A DNA stretch of 64,000 bases from Bigelowiella natans CCMP2755 (taxonomy: Eukaryota; Protista; Cercozoa). A model generated the notes under the pieces. That model ran no database searches and was not told where the DNA came from. It saw only the letters and a program-made list of their open reading frames with translations. This document shows positions 44,808-55,593 of this stretch, piece by piece; the first letter of the stretch is position 1, and every line of letters starts with the position of its first letter. Position numbers and translations under genes: made by a program. The stretch is from the NCBI GenBank assembly GCA_000320545.1, contig ADNK01000452.1:1-64000 (forward strand). The letters run 5' to 3'.

Positions 44808-47800
44808 GAGGATACAAAGAGTTAATGTAGTATACGTGTTATTTTCTCTGGCACCTGAATTTATTTCGCCTGAAAGGTTTACTTCCTCGTCGGCAAAGGA
44901 GCGAAAAGTGCGAGGAATAGTTTCCGATTCTCTGGGTGCAGCAGCGTCTTCGGAGTTCGTCGTCCAGGTGTTGCCGACGGAAATTGATTACGCAGAGGGC
45001 CAGGATGTGCTCTCACAAAAGCTGGAGAATGGGGACGTGACAGGCTACGCCCTCTATTTCCGTGCGATGGCGGTTAGTTCTAACAGCCTCCAGCTGATGC
45101 CATCATCCCCCGCTCAGAACCACGAGGAGCAAATTGATAGATTCTCCGAGATTCGTTTCAATCTTACCAAGGATATCCAGGCGCTCTTGAATGGCCTGAC
45201 TGATGTCGGGGTAGAGGAGAGCGTGAACACGCCTCTAGAGCTCCTCGCCTCTGCAACCGACTTCGACGACAGCAGCCCGGAGATCCTCAATCAAGAAACG
45301 AAGCAGCTAGCGGTTGGGATAGTGAAGAATATGTCGAAAGACATTCTCTTCACGCCAGAGGCAATGAGCGCTGCCACAAACATCTTAGGCAATGTCGCAG
45401 CATCGCTCGCCAATCAGAGCATCACTGGAGATGGCTCAGCTTGGGAGGAAGTGACTGAGATGGCCGCAGAGCTCGAAGAGACGAGTTTGAATATCACACA
45501 GCAACTAGCCGACAGTCTTCTCGAGGGAGAAGCAAACGCCGACATCGTCACCCCTCGTGCTACTCTGCTGGCCCTTCGCGTTGCCCCTGGGCAGCTTCAG
45601 GGTTCCCAGTTGACTTCCGAATCATCTGCGAGTCTGAAGGTACAGATTCTCACGGATGCGCAGGGGTTGGGCGGAGAACAGCTGACACCGCAACAATCTA
45701 TTAGCGCAAAGGTTGTATGGTTCAAGACCTCGTTGTATCGTTCAAATCAGAGCAGCGATGGCAACGAAGTTGATGGAGGGAACGAAGGTGTTATGTCTGT
45801 GAAACTCAGTCAGGCTGGGAGTGATGTCAAGGTCAACGGTAGCGAGGATGCTTTCTACATCTCGATGCCGATTCAACCGGTAACGTCCGGGTCCGCAAAT
45901 GTGAGGTGCAAATACTGGTCGCCTGAGGAAATGGAGTGGCGGCACGATGGAGTCGCATTCGCAAATTTTTCCTCATCGGCAGAAGGGACAGGAGTCAGCA
46001 ACCAAAACGATTCTGCCCGTTCCGGAGCTGTATGCAGCGCAAAGCATTTGACCGCCTTTAGCGTATCAGTTAACACGTTCTCTGCATCTGACGTTCAAGC
46101 CGACGCATTTTCCTTCGCAAATCCAGTGACTATTTTCTCTACAACGCTGCTGCTCATTGCGATCTTTGCGCTGGGCCCCGCGCTTCTTTATGACTCATGG
46201 CTGAGGGCATCGCGCGGAAATGAATCGTCAGAAGCGTTTTGGCGCAAATCAAACATGATAATGGAGGAAAGATTCACAAGGCAGCGTTCGTGGCATCGAT
46301 TTTGGCGTTCAGTCAAGTGGAGCTTCCGCCGAAAACACGTGTGGACATCGATCTTTCTACGGCATCCAGGCGACCACATGACCTCAGCGAAGAGAGTTGT
46401 TGTGCTCATTGTCCTACTGTTCAACACCATGATGTTGTGTGCGCTATTACTCGACCAGGAGCAGCAAATACTTTTCTTTTCTGCAGACACTTCTGCCGCC
46501 TTGGTGGCGATGTTCCTTGCGTTTCCAGTGCCCTATGTCCTTTTGAATCTGTACTCCCGCAAAACCCCATCTTCTTACTATGTCAAACTTGATTACGCTA
46601 TGTACTCCGGATGGGTGCAGTTGTTAATCACGTGCTTCTCGTTGTTCTCTGGTGAGCTGGCTTCATTAGAGCTGGCCGAGAATGAAGATGATGAGGAGGA
46701 TGATGATTTCGAGCTTGATGAGGGAGAAGATGAAGAAGAGAATGATGATGGAGAGGGAGATTTGGGGAGGAGAGAGGAGGAGGACGATGAGGACGGAGAT
46801 GGAGAGGTTTCACTAATCTCAAGCATTAGTCTGATCTTGTTGTGCATGATTTGATGTTGTTACTTCTCTTCGAATTGGATAGCACTCACCAGCCTTTAAT
46901 GTTATTTTTTTCAATGATATGTCAGGACAATGGAGATACCTCAAGCGACGAGGATGAGAAAAAAGTAGAGATTGTTCACAGGCCGCAACAAACTGGAACT
47001 AACGTAGCTGCCAATCAAAATGTGGATTATATTCACAGGGAAAAACTCAACAAGTCAGAATTCGACGTTGAGGAATCCAACAGGTCGAGCTACGGGACAA
47101 AAGGTGTCGTTTCTCCACACGCCATCGGTGCAGCCGCTGGTGCAATCGCAGCTGCTGAGTTGGCGGGGGATCGCAAAAAACAACAGCTAAGGCCCCATGG
47201 ATATGCTGATTTCACAACATCATCAAGTCAGACGACTCAACCGCTGCATCTCTCGGAATCGGATGCGAGTGAGAGTAACGGCTCAAAACGCACACAACAC
47301 ATACGTAGCATTCAGCTAGCTAGGACGCTGGTCTTAGGCCCGGAAGATATCAAGCTTAAGGAGAGTGGTGCAAATCTAGTGACAGACTCTCTCAAAGATG
47401 CGTCTTCTGCCAAAGACTACGACAGCCCGTCAGTATTAATCTCGGGTATTCCAGGCTCGACGATGCATCACCAAGGCATTGGGCCTCGACCAGTGCTTAG
47501 CCGGAGTATGTCTCGACCAAATCTTGGCCGGGGAAGGTCTCGACTAAGGCTCAGCCGGGGAAAGTCTCGACTAAATCTTGCCCGGGGAAAGTCTCGACTA
47601 AACCTTGCCCGGGGAAAGTCTCGACTAAACCTTGCCCGGGGAAAGTCTCGACTAAGGTTGCGGCGTATGGTGAGCTCTGCAGACATGGTGGGAACGACGA
47701 TGGGGACTATTCGTCACTTGGAGGACGATAAGGGCGGCAAGCACGACGTAGACACGCACAAATGGCGTTCAAGGGATTACGTCGCCCTGTTTTTCTCGTG

Positions 47801-49046
47801 CACAATATTGAGTGGATGCTGGTTCTTGCTTGCTGTGTATTCTTGGCGACTGCGAGACAAATTCGACGACTTCTGGAGTGCCTCGATGCTGTCATTCGCA
47901 AACGACATTTGTTTCCGCGCCTTCTCCATCTTTTACATGGATGCCTTCATCCTGTCCCCATTTTGTGCGTGGTGCTGCTTTTGCATTCGAAGCAAAATTA
48001 AGGAGGAAGAGCTCAAGGAGATGAGATCGGGTGGAGACAGCGTATACGAGGGACACATCGTCACGCTGAAGTTCAAGGCTGGTAACGACATTGGGTTCAC
48101 GTATCAGTCCTGCCGGGTGGTAGAGGTGGAAGAAAGCACACAGGCAATGCGCGCGGGTGTTCAAAAAGGCTGGAAGATCCTCAGGATGGGGGATAGTGAT
48201 GAATTAGATGGCCCTACGAGATGCCCTGATTTGAGCACAGACAAAGATATTAGAATTCGACTGTATATTTTGCATCGCACGCGAGACACGTTCTCGGTGG
48301 TATTTGAGAAGCCTATGGAGCGGAAGTTCCAAGCGCGTAGGAAGATGGAGGGAAACTTTATCTCTGAGGATTCCGATTCCAGCAGTGTGAAGCCTACGGA
48401 GCGGAAGTTGCAAGCGCGTAGGAAGATGGAGGGAAACTTTATCTCTGAGGATTCCGATTCCAGCAGCGAGTTTTCTTTTTTCTCCAATCTTACAGACAAT
48501 GATCCCAGATTGTACTTGCCTCCTCAAGATTCCCGGCCAACATCACGTCAAGCATGGGCTTCTTCGCATGTTCGAGAAGCTGTAGTTCGTGAAAGAACGA
48601 AGCCTACGGAGCGGAAGTTCCAAGCGCGTAGGAAGATGGAGGGAAACTTTATCTCTGAGGATTCCGATTCCAGCAGTGAGAAGCCTACGGAGCGGAAGTT
48701 GCAAGCGCGTAGGAAGATCGAGAGAACCTCTATTTCTGAGGATTCCGATTCCACCAGAGAGTTTTCTTTTTTCTCCAATCTTACAGACAATGATCCCAGA
48801 TTGTACTTGCCTCCTCAAGATTCCCGGCCAACATCACGTCAAGCATGGGCTTCTTCGCATGTTCGAGAAGCTGTAAAGAAGAATAATGGTGATGCAGTTG
48901 GTGAAACAAAGAAGCGAATCCAAGCACAGGCTCGCACAAATGCTCTCCGCAATTTTCTGGAACTCTCTAAGGCAGAGGTGAAGGATTTTGATGCATCTGA
49001 TCGTAGCACCTCTTCCGACACCGATGAACCTGATGATGCACTTTGA
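33947..49046 (+). CDS. polycystin-1 (PKD1/REJ)-like adhesion receptor: signal peptide, Pro/Thr/Ser mucin stalks, C-type lectin, CUB, RCC1-like repeats, LamG, REJ, GPS, ~5 TM, PDZ
   Basis: Signal MNLSIFVLLALLSHVGG. CTL: FWQANRFC..QLASVHSNAEM..PWVWLDGSRWDFTRW. CUB-like: IEFSRLELAPQNSIKVYEG. RCC1-like: VVSWGD/VVTWGDDDLGG/VVCWGAKQHGG. LamG: FDGQNDYVSLP..FSIAVWAKFD..FYMDG. REJ: LVPGRTYEFRFQA, GLSMKTRFRLWCRDWSDADEPL. GPS: CKYW...VCSAKHLTAF (HL|T at 46045-46053). PKD1-type KHVWTSIFLRHPGDHMTSAKRVVVLIVLLFNTMMLCALL. PDZ: IGFTYQSCRVVEVEESTQAMRAGVQKGWKIL (~48050-48200). Confidence 0.87.
34214..34560 (+). repeat. tandem intron+exon duplication, 200-bp period
   Basis: Introns 34214-34296 and 34414-34494 are near-identical (gtaagaatgcatagc...acag) and are followed by similar exons (TTRTPTTLHPTQSP / TTGVPTTLNPTQSP). 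Confidence 0.95.
35062..35240 (+). repeat. 60-bp coding tandem repeat x3 (STTSPSTCAPSSLAPTSCSP)
   Basis: Identical columns in consecutive 60-nt lines 35041-35240. Confidence 0.95.
37487..37636 (+). repeat. 12-bp coding tandem repeat (PTKY)n with RW/RQ/KN variants
   Basis: ccgacgaaatac-type units repeated about 12 times in ORF 37271..37753. Confidence 0.93.
43781..43858. repeat. compound intronic microsatellite (CT)16(CA)9(GA)14
   Basis: Read directly from sequence, inside intron ~43761-43937. Confidence 0.95.
47528..47657 (+). repeat. 27-bp coding tandem repeat x5 (RG[K/R]SRL[N/R]L[A/S])
   Basis: ccggggaaagtctcgactaaaccttgc-type units starting at 47528, 47555, 47582, 47609, 47636. Confidence 0.95.
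48309..48874 (+). repeat. nested coding duplication: 81-bp unit pairs within a 291-bp unit x2
   Basis: KP[M/T]ERK[F/L]QARRK(M/I)E..SEDSDS x4 and EFSFFSNLTDNDPRLYLPPQDSRPTSRQAWASSHVREAV x2; AAG anchors at 48309 and 48600. Confidence 0.95.
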
Positions 49047-49669: not shown

Positions 49670-51442
49670 CTACACACTGCTCAAATTTGATAATCGAACC
49701 GTCACCGCCGATGGTCTGCTGCTGGACTGCTCACCAGCCATGGCATGCTCACTATGATCACCACTATTACCACCATTCCCGCTGCATTTATCCCCTGCTA
49801 CCGTTGTTATGTCAGCAGCTTCTACGAAGTCTGCCGCCGTTTGCCGATGACCGCGAGGGCACATAGTCGCAGCAGGCCTTTCCCCTGTCAAGGATTCCGA
49901 TGGGGAGACACCAAAGGACACTTCCTTTTTGCCGCTGATATTTCCATTCGGATAATCGTGAATCTTCTTATCATCCGTGGAATGCTTGAGCTCGACGACC
50001 GGGTCACCGTCCTTCCAGATAGCGTCTGTGTTTCCTTTCACTTCCTCGTCACGGCGATGACTGGGTGATTCAAAGCGCCTGGCCGCGGCGTTGGCGAGGC
50101 TGCGGCTCTTCTTGGGTTCATGCTTATGCAATGTGACGACAGATTTGTAGTACAATTTTTCTCTGTTATTATCTGCCTCTACCTCCTCCCATGACTTAAA
50201 CGCAAAGCCAGTAGCAGCAGCGATCACATAGAGCAGGTTCAACCCCCCCCAGAACACGACGAACACTATGGCGCATAGGATGTCTAATCCCCGCGCTGCT
50301 GCGTCTGAGATGAAGAATACAAATACGGCCTCGAGCGCCACGAAGGCCATGAGGAGGTATATGCACAGGATGTACATATCCATCACCTTGGTTAATGCGA
50401 TTCGCCGCCACCGCCGCCACCAGCAAAAACAACACAGCAGCAAATGGGGAGAAGATGTATGTCGTTAAAGAGCACTAGCGTAGACACACATAAATGCGAC
50501 ACAGCTATACTCGCATCGCAATCATCAGTCAATGGAAGCCGCCTCTCCGCAGCAAAAGAAGAGCAGCGGCGGCACTGGCAGTAGGCGTCGGGGCTAGTGG
50601 GATGAGGGGGGTCAATATTATTCGCAGCATTATTACCGTCGTATAGGATATGATCGGAAGCACCGAGGATATCCACAGCTTGAACGCGACGATCGTCAGC
50701 AGCAGCCTGATGACCAGCGTCAGCCTCGCCTCGAGATTCCTCTCCGAGTCCACGTCGAACAAGAACGCCCCGGCCCCAATCATCGTGATGATGAAGGCTG
50801 GCAGCACCATATTGAGGAAGTAGAAGTTCTGGTAGCGTTGCACTCGAGCGATAAACTGTATCACGCCGCCATCCAGGTCGTAAGTCACCGTTGCTTCCTG
50901 GCTACAGTATCTGTATGCATAGGGGCAAGAATCGGCGAGACCGATGACGGAGGGAGGGGAGAAGGAGGAGGAAGAGGAGAACGGGAGCAGCTTAGAGGAG
51001 TGAGCACAACAATAATCGCACAACCCCCTTCAAATCCCTCATCAAGCACAATCAACAGGATATCATATATTTATACAAATGCATAGGAAGGGGTGTGTGC
51101 GCCTCCTCCTCCCCCCCCTCCTCATCCTCGTCGTCGTCGTCGTCGTCGTCGTTGTGCGCATCATCATCCCTATCATCATTCACTGTGCTGCACGATATAT
51201 GGTGTCGCACGGACTCCGCTCTGGCTCGCGCGGCAAGCTTGATGTGGCATTGCGACTCGTTGAGGTGCGAAGGGAGCTTCCATTTGTCCGGCGGCTTCTC
51301 ACAGAACACCCAATCGCCGGTGTCAACAAGCAGCGGGATGTGGAGCAGCTGGCGGTCAAACGGAAAGCGACCCAGCTCCATCTCCTCTTCGAGACTATCG
51401 TTAGCCCGTCCCCATTACCACGTACACATACACACAGAGAGA

Positions 51443-51479
<37 letters not shown>

Positions 51480-53490
51480 CGCACGCCACACATTCGCACA
51501 TAGTACAATAAGTTTAATGATAGCTGCTTAACTTTCATTTATTTACTGAATCTAATAGATGGATGGATGGATGGATGGGACAGCGTTTTCTCTGCCGCCG
51601 CCGCCTCCTCTCTAATCGATTTGCCACCACCCCCCCAACTCTGTACCACCACCCCACCAATTGGTAGCTCTGCTGCTGCTGGTTCCTGACCTGATGCTGA
51701 GTTTGTAGCGCCCATGAACTACACCAACTTGCGAGTAGAAATCCTCCTCCCGGTGCGTGATCACAAGCGACCGGCCTAGGCCGTTGGCAAACAACCGGTT
51801 GAACGACAACGGAAGCCGATCTTCTCCCTTCCTCGTCAGGGCGATGGGGCATCTCGGAAAGCAGCGCACGTCGGTGTCTTTGTCGTCGTCCATGATTGGA
51901 ATCGCGCGCTTTTCCGCGAAGATGTCCGGGTCCTTCCAGAAGATGTTGAGTTCGCACGCAATGGAGAACTTCTCCATCTGTAGGTTTATTTCCTGTCAAC
52001 CCATCAACCAAGGACGCTCAGCACGCAAGGCGGAAACCATCGCCACCACCGCCAACCCCACCGTGAAAGAGAAAGAGGAAGAAGGAAGGGGGGTGCTTTG
52101 CTGTGGGCGAGTGTTCGCTGAGGGGAGTGCAGTAGCATTTCTTACCGTTACTTCGATATCTAAATGCAAGAAAACTTTGGACTTGGGGATCACTTTCACG
52201 ACCAATTTTGGAGGAAAAGCAACCGAGAGACTATTTCCCCTAGTCCTCTTGTTGTTTTTCCTCGTTCCCTCCTCCTGCATAAGCCGGGTAAGACGAAGGA
52301 TGTCACTGTTCTTCTGACTCTCATCGCGGTAGGCTCCCTCTATGAAGTAGTTGTTCTTGCCGTCGCTTGCAAAATCTCTGTGCAGATCGTAAAGCAGCAA
52401 TGGCCTGCTCTTGTAGTAATCTGGAGATGAGTAATGATAGGAGGAGGAGGAGGAGGAGGAGGAGGAGGAGGAGGAGGGGGGGTGACAACAGGTTTAGACA
52501 ACATAACATATGAAGTTAGAATAAAGTGGAGAGGGCAGAAGAAATATATACATGTACAGCAGCTGCGACTATTTGTCCACCACCCCCTTTTTCTTCTTTA
52601 TCATCATCATTATCAACATCATCATCGCCATCAGCATTACCACTTCAATCTACACTATCTAGCAGCAGATTGTTCATACATTCCTGATGAGGTTGACGGC
52701 CAGACAACCTACATTCCTTCAGCTTCGACGGCTCCTTCGGCCAAACGAGAAAGAACTTCTTCCGCACTTCTCCCTCTCCCCCTTCTTTCTCCTCTTTCTC
52801 AACCTTACAAATGAGTTTCCATCCTGCTATTCGGAGATATCTGCTGTCTTTTTGAACGATGCCCTCATACTCCTTCCGTATGGACAGCTTGTTCGAGAAG
52901 TTCTGGAATCGCAGATCGAGCAAGGTGAGGATGTGGCCTAGCTTGGAGATCCCAATAGCCCTAAGATCATCCTTTTCTAGCTCCAGCATCTGGGAACCGC
53001 TGATTTCGTTCTTTCTGTAGTGAGAAGGACAGTGACCGTGGAGTACAATTATTTGGCAGATTATGGTCGTGGAATAATGTGAAAAGGGAGGCGAAGTCAG
53101 AAAGATGCGAGGAAGGGCAGGAAAAGTAGTGCGGCGGGCAAGACAAAAATCTCTTTGTTAGAAACCTGACCTGAAGATCTCCGCGTAACCAAGGCCAGGA
53201 AAAGTTTTCTCTACTACTTCTGCTAAAGCTTGGATATCAAGGTTTTCGATGGTCGAGTCGTGCTGCATCTGTCGCAATCTCTGGCTACCAAGCGACTCAC
53301 AGTCGTGGCCAACTTCTCCCGTACCCCCGGAGTTTGCAGCTGCTGCCAGAGCGGCAAGACTTTCATCGATATAACTCACAGACTTCTTTCGCCTCAACTG
53401 CATGTAAATGATTACTGTGTTTGTTCCTCAAAGGAAGTGGGGCAAATAATGTCGGATGTAATCGCTCACCATCGTGAACTTTGGGAACAT
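49670..53490 (-). CDS. Cys-less (Pro-loop) pentameric ligand-gated ion channel with N-terminal SAM domain
   Basis: SAM: LAEVVEKTFPGLGYAEIFR|KNEISGSQMLELEKDDLRAIGISKLGHILTLL. ECD: FSIACELNIFWKDP, RLFAN, MELGRFPFDRQLL (Pro-loop, no Cys pair). M1 NFYFLNMVLPAFII; M2 EARLTLVIRLLLTIVAFK; LPIISYTTVMDMY + M3; M4 LDILCAIVFVVFWGGLNLLYV. First exon MFPKFTM inferred (ATG 53490). Confidence 0.9.
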
Positions 53491-53574
53491 GTGTCTTGGA
53501 CCTTAGCGAGGAGGACAGATTCGTTTGAACAGCAGTAATACCGAGTCACAACGTACAGACTTATTTACATATTC

Positions 53575-54140
53575 AAAAAACAGAAATTAGTCAAAGCTGT
53601 CACAGACTCATCGCCAAGCCCTTCCTCTCTAGTCTACAGCCAATGGAAGGAGTGCCACAGCTTGCCCCTCGGACCTTACTGGTCTTCGGATATCCGCAGT
53701 CTACGCGGACTTAGATGTGCCCTGCAGGTAGTTCGGGTAATCATGGGGGCGACGAAATTGAATTAGACCCGAATGATGTGGGAGGTCGAAATGAAAGGTA
53801 CAAGTAGTTCGCACGACGATGGGGTGATGAGCTTCCATGAACAGCTTGTACTCTTGGAGCACCATGAAATCCCGGCAGTAACCGTGATTCAGAGCATTTC
53901 ACGCCCCTTCAGTTGGACGGTTTTAGGCCAAAACCCGTAATCACGGTGCTCAGTCGGGGGAAAACTTCGTTCGGGCCCTGGTCGTACTCGTTGTTGGGGC
54001 GATGATTACGCAGCTCGCGAACGTAATCCCTGGGTCTCTGGTTAATACCCGATATTCTCAGGGATTCGGATGAGGACGTTGGTATTGGCATTTGAATGAC
54101 TGTATCGTCACTTGTTGAGAAAATGAGAAACATTTTCTCC
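53575..54140 (-). other. unexplained high-complexity, hairpin-rich segment (candidate structured ncRNA or small/frameshifted gene)
   Basis: Local inverted repeats (see findings); AATTTCTG followed by T6 on the minus strand; a ~118-codon minus ORF ending 53909 overlaps it. No family recognised. Confidence 0.3.
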
Positions 54141-54317
54141 CGGAGACGTGTCGAAAGCCTTAGAATGTCTTCGGCTTGTAAAATATCGAGAGTTCTTTGG
54201 ATGCGACACATGAAATATGGGCTGGAAGTAGTTAAATCTCCTTTGTACGAATCGAAATATGCCATTAAAATCTGAAATCCTACGTTGTGAAAGCACAATC
54301 CAACTGCTGCGCCCGTA

Positions 54318-55593
54318 ATGCCCACCTCTGCTATTGCGAAGCCTATCCAGGACAACGATTGTGCCAAGGTCTGCATTCATAGTCATTGTTATGGAGATTA
54401 GCCTCACAGATGTTCCCTTCTCCATAGGGGCCTATCGTAGAAGCAACGTCGGACAAGAATGGCAGCAATATTATCATAGCTGTTGCTCTTCTCGTCCTTT
54501 ACTTTGGCATGAACCTTGTTTTCAATATCTACAACAAGTGGCTTTTCAACGGACCATTACCTGCGCCAGTATTTGTCACAGCAACCCATCAGGTTGACAC
54601 TGTACAGACTGCACGATGAAGCTCGAGCTAATAATTAATATATGTAAATTAGGTGTTTTGCTTCGCCGGTGCTCTCCTTGCGGCGTGCTGTGCTCCAGAC
54701 AGCTGGTACAAACGCACTCCTCTCGAAGGCAGCGGTAGTGCAGCTACCTTGTTCTCCCCTGCTATCTCAAACCTAACATTTAGTTTACTTTCTCAGCAAT
54801 GATCACGAAATTGATGATCATTCCATTCGGTTTCTGTATGAACATCGGGCTAAATAACATCTCGTTACTATTCTGCACGTTGGCTCTGAACCAGTTGATT
54901 AGATCGTTTGCCCCTGTCACTGTTGCGATCGCTTCCTACTTCATCGAGGGAAAAAGCTACTCATTCCCTAAACAAGCTACCCTGGCTTTTCTGGTCCTAG
55001 GCATTGTTCTTGGCGTGTCCTCATCACCTGACTTTGAGTTCCTTGGATTCATCATCTGTACCGCATCCGTGGTCGGATCTACCCTTCAAGTTGTTTTGAC
55101 TGGCTATTTCATGGGTGGCCAAAAAGTAACGTTGCATGTCTTCGATATCCTCCTCTACACCGCTATTCCCTGCATAGCATTCCTTATCCCCATGGCCTAC
55201 TTGGTCGGTGATCACATCAAACTTATTGAGGCCTTCGAAGCCCATGGACCCGCTCAATTCTTCGGACTTGTATTTGCGGGTGGCCTCATGGCGTTCTCGT
55301 ATAACATCATTACGATCTGCCTGATCAAATTCACCTCCTCCGTCTACTACGCGGTAGCAGGGGGCTTCAAGGTGTGCCTTGTCATTGGAATGTCTTTCGT
55401 ATTCTTTGACCAAAAGATCTCGACCTTGTCATTCATCGGAATAATCATATCGTGCATGGCATTCGTTGGAAACTCGTACCTCACTTTCAGAGAGAAACAG
55501 CAGAAGAAGGAACAAGTTCAGCGGAAGTCTCTCGAAGAGGAGAACGAAGGATTGCTCAGCGGAAAGCAGAAAGTTGTTCAGGAGAGCGTGTAG
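54318..55593 (+). CDS. triose-phosphate/nucleotide-sugar transporter family (TPT, DMT superfamily), 4 exons
   Basis: MPTSAIAKPIQDNDCAK|GPIV..LLVLYFGMNLVFNIYNKWLF..PVFVTATHQ|VFCF..|..MNIGLNNISLLFCTLALNQLIRSFAP..FSYNIITICLIKFTSSVYYAVAGGFKVCLVIGMSFVFF; typical TPT-family motifs. Confidence 0.9.

What the first reader, a model, noticed from the sequence alone, without database searches (positions are those of the whole stretch)
49670..53490. SAM domain fused to a Cys-less pentameric ligand-gated channel with no signal peptide: possibly inverted or intracellular pLGIC
The N-terminus (MFPKFTMLRRKKSVSYIDESL...) is basic, not a signal peptide. A SAM domain, normally a cytosolic oligomerisation module, precedes the ligand-binding domain with no hydrophobic segment visible between them (seen). 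Canonical pLGICs export this domain (established). So the ligand-binding domain may face the cytosol, sensing intracellular ligands, with SAM clustering the pentamers (inference). A protist channel class of this kind could be undescribed.
Basis: partly seen in the sequence, partly recalled or inferred. Interest (0 to 1): 0.72.

Follow-up and report, generated by a model that had tools for sequence, protein, structure and literature searches.

The report
SAM-fused pentameric channel lacking signal peptide
The alga Bigelowiella natans and its relatives have ion channels of the neurotransmitter-receptor type that carry a SAM docking domain and no export signal, so their ligand-sensing half probably sits inside the cell, which no described channel of this superfamily does.

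Summary
Window 53490-49670 (minus strand) is an 8-exon gene of Bigelowiella natans (JGI Bigna1 model 86014, which is a poor model). My model gives 776 aa: a basic N-terminus, a SAM domain, a ~100-aa beta module, a Cys-less (FPFDRQ) pLGIC ligand-binding domain, four TM helices with a 5-9 aa M3-M4 loop, and a 175-aa hydrophilic C-tail.

- Upstream exon: transcript contigs start at the same ATG, with in-frame stops just upstream, in two species. The genomic locus of a third also has an in-frame stop.
- Hidden TM: nothing before M1 is hydrophobic enough (KD19 at most 1.05).
- Separate transcripts: SAM and channel lie on one transcript in two orthologues and in one intronless ORF in two B. natans paralogues.

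The fusion defines a single clade (99/99) of six genes from three chlorarachniophytes.

A cytosolic ligand-binding domain (N-in, C-in) is the most economical reading (about 0.6) but remains inference. No RNA reads could be laid. This gene's intron 6 is retained in both transcript contigs. SAM self-association was not shown.

Most of the nearest relatives (Chlamydomonas, Prymnesium, Hydractinia) also lack a signal peptide and have long C-tails. I found no paper describing this.

The parts
53470..53490 (-). Exon 1 (start codon at 53490; 7 codons)
   Evidence: Spliced to exon 2 in transcript contig L001. In-frame TAA four codons upstream.
53491..53842 (-). 5' leader as seen in transcript contig L001, colinear with the genome; contains small uORFs
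   Evidence: blastn of L001 on the window; sequence.
53171..53397 (-). Exon 2: basic, disordered N-terminus and first half of the SAM domain
   Evidence: L001 splice map.
52680..53014 (-). Exon 3: second half of SAM and first strands of the beta module
   Evidence: Pfam SAM_1 27.4 bits and SAM_2 24.3 bits on this exon. The donor after 52680 comes from L001/P0087.
52897..53250 (-). SAM domain (aa 57-122; spans intron 2)
   Evidence: SAM_1 1.4e-08, 35.4 bits on P0087. The equivalent helices have pLDDT above 90 in the orthologue model. Coordinates.
52320..52878 (-). Conserved ~100-aa beta module between SAM and the channel (aa 129-228; spans intron 3)
   Evidence: Conserved in all six family members (alignment A3). 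pLDDT about 90 in context and 80.6 alone. Only weak PH-like/SANTA resemblance, Z at most 5.5.
52146..52420 (-). Exon 4: end of the beta module, helix alpha1, beta1 of the ligand-binding domain
   Evidence: L001 splice map; homology to P0084 and P0085.
51691..51992 (-). Exon 5: beta1-beta2 turn to beta6 of the ligand-binding domain
   Evidence: The acceptor at 51992 comes from L001 and from homology. The genome search exon hit 7e-33.
51215..51394 (-). Exon 6: Pro-loop (FPFDRQ, no flanking cysteines; 51331-51390) to beta8. The weak donor GA|GTCCGT is placed by homology only.
   Evidence: Gap-free alignment with three homologues across the junction. Exon hit 1.2e-14.
50911..51214 (-). Intron 6, retained in both available transcript contigs. 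Read through, it adds an acidic run and a stop, giving the 500-aa product P0087.
   Evidence: L001 runs 51396-51043 and L003 runs 51103-50632 without a break; P0087 sequence.
50637..50910 (-). Exon 7: beta9-beta10, M1 (50751-50825), M2 (50655-50732), M2-M3 loop
   Evidence: 197 PDB pLGIC sequences matched at the same position. 80% identical to Amorphochlora P0002.
49670..50386 (-). Exon 8: M3 (50306-50386), 5-aa M3-M4 loop, M4 (50198-50290), 175-aa hydrophilic C-tail (49673-50197), stop codon
   Evidence: The exon 7/8 junction and the unspliced tail are in transcript contig L003 = P0001. Coordinates.

Best explanation
[quoted passage not shown] The order is: a short basic tail, a SAM domain, a flexible linker, a conserved small beta module, the usual beta-sandwich ligand-binding domain, and four TM helices. 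The M3-M4 loop is prokaryote-like and very short. A long hydrophilic C-tail follows M4.

Shown here: the architecture, its conservation, and the absence of any signal peptide or TM segment before M1.

Inferred: nothing can drive the roughly 475-aa N-terminal region across the membrane, so M1 inserts as an N-in signal anchor. SAM, the beta module, the ligand-binding domain, the M2-M3 loop and the C-tail would then all lie in the cytosol. Only the two shortest loops (M1-M2 and M3-M4) would face the outside or an organelle lumen. The channel would be gated by a cytosolic small molecule or ion. SAM and the C-tail would act as cytosolic docking or regulatory parts, taking the role that the long M3-M4 loop has in animal receptors.

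The ligand, the ion selectivity and the host membrane are unknown. M2 has Ala at -1', Arg at 0', Leu at 9' and an unusual Arg at 6', which hints at anion preference; that is speculation.
For: Gene structure: transcript contigs L001 and L003 confirm six of the seven introns.

Identity: SAM and pLGIC assignments rest.

N-terminus is complete:
- In-frame stops lie 2-4 codons upstream of the ATG in two transcripts (L001, L002) and in the Amorphochlora genomic locus.
- The three orthologues start within a few residues of each other with the same basic motif.
- The two intronless B. natans paralogue ORFs have a stop 1-4 codons before their ATG.

Hydropathy: none of the six family members has a segment reaching KD19 1.5 before M1 (maxima 0.77-1.05). 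None has a signal-peptide-like h-region. The same crude score does detect signal peptides in canonical relatives (2.3-3.25).

Structure: the AF2 model shows only the SAM helices, a disordered linker and beta strands before M1.

M1 flanks: 2-4 K/R on the N side and an acidic or neutral M1-M2 loop. This fits N-in insertion.

Hydrophilic mass: all of it (N-region 351-481 aa, C-tail 51-183 aa) lies on one side, while M3-M4 is 2-9 aa.

Wider pattern: among the nearest non-family relatives, 30 of 42 lack a signal-peptide-like segment and have a median post-M4 tail of 52 aa. The 8 with a signal peptide have a median tail of 3.5 aa (Fisher p = 0.005).

Single origin: the SAM fusion forms one clade, support 99/99.
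Against: - Topology was not predicted with a dedicated tool or measured. The hydropathy criterion is crude.
- A K+R count over the loops does not separate canonical from signal-peptide-less members.
- SAM can be luminal (STIM1 EF-SAM). Long N-terminal ectodomains can cross without a signal peptide (neuregulin-1). Both points are from my own knowledge.
- For this gene itself, the exon 6-7 junction rests on homology alone. Both transcript contigs retain intron 6, which would truncate the protein before the pore.
- RNA reads could not be obtained.
- The JGI model adds a 96-aa N-terminal extension from an upstream ORF. That ORF begins with a hydrophobic stretch, which the JGI model does not include.
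- SAM self-association got no answer.
Confidence: 0.6

Rival explanations
1. Canonical orientation after all. The ligand-binding domain and SAM are exported. Either M1 acts as a reverse (type III) signal anchor that translocates the long N-terminal region, as in neuregulin-1, or a 5' exon is still missing. SAM would then be luminal or extracellular, as in STIM1.
For: Every pLGIC characterised so far has an external ligand-binding domain (established knowledge; PDB hits). The upstream minus-strand ORF 53909-54376 starts with a 22-aa hydrophobic stretch, and the JGI model joins part of that ORF to this gene. L001 does not reach that ORF, so a retained first intron cannot be strictly excluded.
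Against: The start position and basic motif are conserved in three species, with stops just upstream. The upstream ORF has no Pfam hit, no exact product on record and no counterpart upstream of the Amorphochlora gene. Two intronless paralogues also lack any signal. A folded SAM plus beta module and 350-480 aa is far beyond typical N-tail translocation. The M1 flanks, positive on the N side and acidic on the C side, disfavour N-out.
Confidence: 0.2
2. Organelle channel. The short basic N-terminus is a targeting signal for the mitochondrion or the plastid complex, and the ligand-binding domain faces an organelle interior rather than the cytosol.
For: The first 12-13 residues are rich in K/R in the three orthologues, and that part is disordered in the model.
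Against: Acidic residues follow within 14-19 residues. Paralogue C1524 starts its SAM-like region by about residue 13, and the JGI model of paralogue C2141 (P0088, whose 5' end may be incomplete) begins directly at SAM, leaving little room for a presequence. There is no signal peptide of the bipartite kind that chlorarachniophyte plastid proteins use (own knowledge; hydropathy).
Confidence: 0.08
3. This particular copy is not made as a channel. Intron 6 is normally retained, so the main product is a soluble 500-aa SAM plus incomplete ligand-binding domain, or the mRNA is degraded.
For: Two transcript contigs from different samples both retain intron 6. Its donor, GTCCGT, is the weakest in the gene.
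Against: Exons 7-8 are intact and strongly conserved: 80% identity to Amorphochlora over M1-M2, and 63% and 57% in the own-genome exon hits with P0085. The junction placed by homology is gap-free against three homologues. Orthologue transcripts are continuous across it. De novo assemblies often break at partly retained introns (own knowledge).
Confidence: 0.07

Closest known systems
Eukaryotic Cys-less 'Pro-loop' pLGICs of protists and some invertebrates (Jaiteh, Taly and Henin 2016, PMC4795631)
   Same: FPFD Pro-loop without the two cysteines, the pLGIC ligand-binding domain and four TM helices. The nearest sequence relatives are uncharacterised proteins of Chlamydomonas, Prymnesium and Hydractinia.
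   Different: That paper's text has no occurrence of 'signal peptide', 'N-terminal', 'fusion', 'Bigelowiella' or 'Rhizaria', and none of its nine 'sam' matches concerns a SAM domain. Here a SAM domain and a beta module are fused in front. SAM occurs in 5 of the 46 aligned sequences, all of them chlorarachniophyte.
Prokaryotic pLGICs sTeLIC, GLIC and ELIC
   Same: Best sequence-profile match is sTeLIC 6fl9 at 1.9e-15. Similar size, Cys-less, very short M3-M4 loop, TMt 0.70-0.76.
   Different: As far as I recall, the bacterial channels have an export signal and a periplasmic ligand-binding domain; that was not checked here. In the solved chains M4 ends within about 20 residues of the chain end, and they have no SAM. 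This family has no signal and a 51-183 aa tail.
DeCLIC (PDB 6v4s), a pLGIC with an additional N-terminal domain
   Same: A pLGIC core preceded by an extra N-terminal module; it is the top Foldseek hit at 7.9e-18.
   Different: Only the core aligns (349 columns). As far as I know, DeCLIC's extra lobes are periplasmic beta domains. Here the additions are a SAM domain and a small module with weak PH-like resemblance.
Animal Cys-loop receptors (nAChR, GABA-A, GlyR, GluCl)
   Same: Same fold, 9' Leu in M2, conserved pre-M1 Arg and the LPxxSY M2-M3 motif.
   Different: Animal receptors have a signal peptide, the Cys-loop disulfide and a long cytosolic M3-M4 loop that docks scaffolds. Here these are replaced by no signal, no disulfide, a 5-9 aa loop, and docking-type parts at both termini.
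STIM1/2 EF-SAM (own knowledge)
   Same: A SAM domain placed N-terminal to a membrane span in a channel-related protein.
   Different: STIM has a cleavable signal peptide, so its SAM is luminal. This family has none.

Membership tests
pLGIC / Pro-loop receptor superfamily | Beta-sandwich ligand-binding domain followed by four TM helices, in the pLGIC fold | tested here: met
   AF2 model of orthologue P0085 (pLDDT 86, pTM 0.72). At least 500 Foldseek PDB hits, all 50 listed being pLGICs, E about 1e-17 and TMt up to 0.76. Family profile against PDB: 291 pLGIC sequences.
pLGIC / Pro-loop receptor superfamily | Pro-loop motif (F/Y)P(F)D in the beta6-beta7 loop | tested here: met
   FPFDRQ at 51331-51390, in 5 of the 6 family members (FPYDRQ in paralogue C1524). 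F, P and D are nearly invariant across 46 relatives.
pLGIC / Pro-loop receptor superfamily | M2 with 9' Leu, pre-M1 Arg, LPxxSYxT..D M2-M3/M3 motif | tested here: met
   HMMER alignments to nAChR beta2 and GluCl. Nearly invariant columns R415, L461, A465, P475, T481, D484.
pLGIC / Pro-loop receptor superfamily | Pfam Neur_chan_memb / Neur_chan_LBD above gathering score | tested here: inconclusive
   Neur_chan_memb: 31.6 bits (cut-off 28.1) for orthologue P0002, but 24.2 for this gene's P0001 and 14.2 for exon 7 alone. Neur_chan_LBD: no hit for any family member. The joined model was not scanned.
pLGIC / Pro-loop receptor superfamily | N-terminal signal peptide and external ligand-binding domain | tested here: not met
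   No signal-peptide-like or TM segment before M1 in six family members. N-termini are bounded by in-frame stops. The side of the membrane itself was not testable.
pLGIC / Pro-loop receptor superfamily | Assembly as a pentamer and ligand-gated conductance | not testable with these tools
   The size limit of complex prediction excludes a pentamer. No electrophysiology.
Cys-loop receptors sensu stricto | Two cysteines 13 residues apart flanking the FPFD motif | tested here: not met
   Both positions are non-Cys (E and L) in this gene and are not Cys in the aligned family.
SAM domain (Pfam PF00536 / PF07647) | Profile match above gathering score and a five-helix bundle | tested here: met
   SAM_1 35.4 bits against 23 and SAM_2 33.4 against 20.5 on P0087. 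Helices 41-95 of the orthologue model have pLDDT above 90. Paralogue C1524 has no Pfam SAM hit at E 0.01 or below.
SAM domain (Pfam PF00536 / PF07647) | Self-association or polymerisation | tested here: inconclusive
   Complex prediction on two copies of residues 50-125 scored 0.01, verdict 'no answer'.
PH-like superfold (for the beta module) | Seven-stranded beta sandwich capped by a C-terminal helix, with a clear structural match | tested here: inconclusive
   Foldseek found nothing at E 0.001 or below. VIA-align's best hit is a SANTA domain at Z 5.5, followed by RFTS, PH, EVH1 and Ran-binding domains at Z 3-4.6, all under the tool's own caution line of 8.

The most novel reading that the evidence does not exclude
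The inversion is not limited to this gene or to chlorarachniophytes. A whole eukaryotic clade of Cys-less pLGICs would be inserted N-in/C-in and work as channels gated from the cytosol. It includes uncharacterised genes of Chlamydomonas reinhardtii (CHLRE_17g706200v5), Prymnesium parvum and the cnidarian Hydractinia, all without a signal peptide and with long post-M4 tails. The SAM fusion would be one lineage's way of docking such a channel. That would add a second membrane orientation, and an intracellular-receptor role, to one of the best-studied channel superfamilies.
Probability: 0.35. Interest if true: 0.9.

Novelty: new variant of a known kind. Interest (0 to 1): 0.78.

Why it matters
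Every pLGIC described so far, from bacterial GLIC to human GABA-A receptors, senses ligands outside the cell. A family whose sensing domain is left in the cytosol would show that the fold can assemble and gate in the opposite orientation and without the oxidising ER lumen, which fits its lack of the Cys-loop disulfide. It would also point to an unknown intracellular messenger that opens a pLGIC pore.

The hypothesis is directly testable: tag accessibility, glycosylation scanning and inside-out patches. It can be tested in tractable organisms, because signal-peptide-less relatives exist in Chlamydomonas. As far as I recall, Amorphochlora can also be transformed.

The work also repairs a faulty reference gene model, which skips the Pro-loop exon and M3.

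Tried and rejected
No other route to reads was tried.
- Searches used single exons by reference and the database proteins P0087 (aa 1-447 of the gene) and P0001 (aa 455-776). The joined model was built only inside scripts from /data/window.fa, for hydropathy, coordinates and the tree.
- First exon models: A and B were each partly wrong. The final model takes the exon 3 donor from L001, the exon 5 acceptor from A and the exon 6-7 junction from B.
- JGI model P0086: rejected. It skips exon 6, mis-splices the last intron so that M3 is lost, and adds an unconserved N-terminal extension.
- Positive-inside count over loops: it does not discriminate. Canonical members show the same skew.
- SAM homodimer by complex prediction: no support and no evidence against.
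- Spliced exon 6-7 junction: a search in metagenome contigs found nothing. A control 20-mer returned only five contigs, none of them the known transcript L001, and they were not inspected. The collection evidently does not serve these transcripts and the test is void.
- ESM Atlas feature search with the N-terminal 215 aa: no usable hit.
- Exact look-up of the upstream ORF product: not on record.
Pfam finds no PDZ in that gene's last ORF at E 1 or below, and the orthologues do not end in such a motif. Dropped.
Full report
**What is there**

The region is a eukaryotic, intron-containing gene on the minus strand. The window is contig C3285 of a 91.4-Mb genome. The database protein P0086, named jgi/Bigna1/86014, is this gene's reference model, so the organism is the chlorarachniophyte alga Bigelowiella natans.

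Two transcript contigs from IMG samples match the window at 99-100% identity. L001 (1864 nt) covers the 5' part and L003 (1199 nt) the 3' part. With three homologous proteins they fix the exons as follows:
- 53490-53470
- 53397-53171
- 53014-52680
- 52420-52146
- 51992-51691
- 51394-51215
- 50910-50637
- 50386-49670

All introns are GT-AG and 72-304 nt long, and the product is 776 aa. Six of the seven introns are seen spliced in the contigs.

Intron 6 (51214-50911, weak donor GTCCGT) is retained in both contigs, so I placed it by homology. With this junction the protein aligns without a gap to three homologues.

The JGI model is wrong in three places. It skips exon 6, which holds the Pro-loop. 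It uses a false acceptor in the last intron and so loses M3. It also borrows 96 aa from an upstream ORF.

**Domains**

- SAM, aa 57-122. SAM_1 scores 35.4 bits against a cut-off of 23 on P0087, the transcript-derived N-terminal part of this gene. Exon 3 alone already passes.
- Beta module, aa 129-228. It is conserved in all family members. It is confidently predicted (pLDDT about 90 in context, 80.6 alone) but has no clear structural relative. Foldseek finds nothing significant. VIA-align gives a SANTA domain at Z 5.5 and a run of PH-like domains at Z 3-4.6, all below the tool's caution line.
- The rest is a pLGIC:
  - Exon 7 alone hits 197 distinct PDB pLGIC sequences at the beta10-M1-M2 position.
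  - A five-sequence family profile hits 291, the best being sTeLIC at 1.9e-15, with coverage from beta1 through M4.
  - The AF2 model of orthologue P0085 (pLDDT 86, pTM 0.72) gives at least 500 pLGIC matches at about 1e-17, TMt 0.70-0.76.
- The Pro-loop reads FPFDRQ with no flanking cysteines.
- The M3-M4 loop is 5 aa here and 2-9 aa in the family.
- After M4 comes a 175-aa hydrophilic tail.

(a) Upstream exon.
- L001 carries 352 nt upstream of the ATG, colinear with the genome, and has a TAA four codons before the ATG.
- The orthologue transcript L002 has a TAG two codons before its ATG.
- The Amorphochlora genomic locus has a TGA three codons before its ATG. Nothing in the 6 kb upstream resembles the B. 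natans upstream ORF.
- The three orthologues begin within a few residues of one another with the same basic motif.
- The two intronless paralogue ORFs have a stop 1-4 codons upstream of their ATG.
- The upstream ORF 53909-54376 has a hydrophobic start but no Pfam hit, no record and no conservation. L001 does not reach it, so a retained first intron is not strictly excluded.

(b) Hidden TM. In six family members the highest 19-residue hydropathy before M1 is 0.77-1.05, against 1.7-2.6 for the TM helices. No N-terminal 10-mer exceeds 1.41. The same score gives 2.3-3.25 for relatives that have signal peptides. The AF2 model shows only SAM helices, a disordered linker and beta strands there.

(c) Separate transcripts. 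Orthologue transcripts L002 and L013 encode SAM and channel in one ORF. Paralogues C1524 and C3532 do so in single exons. For this gene, L001 and L003 overlap inside the retained intron 6, so at least the primary transcript is continuous.

**Distribution**

B. natans has four such genes: this one, C2141 (= P0088), C1524 and C3532. Orthologues exist in Amorphochlora amoebiformis (P0084/P0002, annotated only as a hypothetical or SAM domain-containing protein) and in a third transcriptome, IMG 3300017015 (P0085).

In a maximum-likelihood tree the six SAM-bearing sequences form one group with 99/99 support. SAM columns were excluded by the trimming. Among 46 aligned relatives only the chlorarachniophyte sequences carry SAM. 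An HMMER scan of 1.84 billion representatives with exon 7 found only two proteins below 1e-10, both from this family.

**Topology reasoning**

Shown: no export signal, and all the large hydrophilic parts (N-region, M2-M3 loop, C-tail) on the same side of a 4-TM bundle.

Inferred: that side is the cytosol. The reasons are:
- a 350-480-aa N-terminal region containing folded domains is not expected to cross without a signal;
- the M1 flanks, with 2-4 K/R before M1 and an acidic or neutral loop after it, suit N-in insertion;
- the long K/R/S-rich C-tails look like cytosolic regulatory tails;
- the absence of the Cys-loop disulfide suits a reducing compartment.

Caveats:
- the loop K+R count is not discriminating;
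- SAM is luminal in STIM, and neuregulin-1 exports a long N-terminal domain without a signal peptide (both from my own knowledge);
- no topology predictor was available.

I put the cytosolic ligand-binding domain at about 0.6.

**A wider pattern**

I looked at the 42 nearest non-family relatives that start with Met and have a full ligand-binding domain. Thirty have no signal-peptide-like segment, and their median post-M4 tail is 52 aa. The eight with a clear signal peptide have a median tail of 3.5 aa (Fisher p = 0.005).

Named examples without a signal come from Chlamydomonas reinhardtii, Prymnesium parvum and Hydractinia. In two relatives, one of them the Prymnesium protein, the Pfam LBD match begins at residue 4-10. 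Some of these are short-contig predictions and could be truncated, so this is a lead, not a result.

**Literature**

Cys-less protist pLGICs are known (PMC4795631; diatoms in PMC11085791). Neither paper's text contains 'SAM domain' or 'signal peptide'. In PMC4795631 the terms 'N-terminal', 'fusion', 'Bigelowiella' and 'Rhizaria' are also absent. Searches for B. natans with ligand-gated channels and for inverted pLGIC topology returned nothing relevant. The library is incomplete, so absence is not proof.

**What could not be done**

- RNA reads were not available.
- The SAM dimer prediction gave no answer.
- The junction search was void, because the collection did not return the known transcript.

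**Verdict**

This is a real, conserved and apparently undescribed architecture within a known superfamily. It carries a specific and testable prediction of reversed membrane orientation.

Noticed in passing
window 50911-51214 (-); L001, L003: Intron 6 is retained in two transcript contigs from different samples. Read through, it encodes a D/E-rich run and then a stop, giving a 500-aa SAM plus partial ligand-binding-domain product (P0087). This could be regulated retention or just an assembly break.
   Followed up: partly
window 53909-54376 (-): A 155-aa ORF upstream on the same strand has a 22-aa hydrophobic start, and the JGI model fuses part of it to this gene. It has no Pfam hit, no exact record and no counterpart upstream of the Amorphochlora orthologue. 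Its status is unknown.
   Followed up: partly
proteins P0011, P0035, P0093, P0059, P0021 and others: Most of the nearest Cys-less eukaryotic pLGICs (Chlamydomonas, Prymnesium, Hydractinia, unnamed assemblies) also lack a signal peptide and have post-M4 tails of 30-270 aa. Relatives with a signal peptide mostly end within a few residues of M4.
   Followed up: partly
window 50655-50732 (-), M2: By alignment to GluCl and nAChR, the pore helix has Arg at 6' as well as Ala at -1', Arg at 0' and Leu at 9'. The 6' Arg is kept in the three orthologues but not in paralogues C2141 and C1524.
   Followed up: no
L012 (Amorphochlora locus) against the window, L005 and L008: Intron load differs greatly between related genes. 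The Amorphochlora orthologue is split into about 30-35 tiny exons over 30 kb, this gene has 8 exons in 3.8 kb, and two B. natans paralogues are intronless.
   Followed up: no
window 54799-55593 (+): The divergent neighbour encodes a triose-phosphate/nucleotide-sugar transporter family protein (Pfam TPT, 4.8e-21). Its first exons probably lie upstream of 54799, in the intergenic stretch towards this gene.
   Followed up: no
window 46842-49046 (+): The last ORF of the convergent neighbour (noted earlier as polycystin-like with a PDZ) holds several near-identical copies of a ~25-aa serine/acid-rich unit and an Arg-rich 'GKSRLNLAR' repeat. Pfam finds no PDZ there at E 1 or below.
   Followed up: partly
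window 49673-49690 (-): The protein ends in -LSSV, a class-I PDZ-ligand-like C-terminus. It is not conserved in the orthologues.
   Followed up: partly
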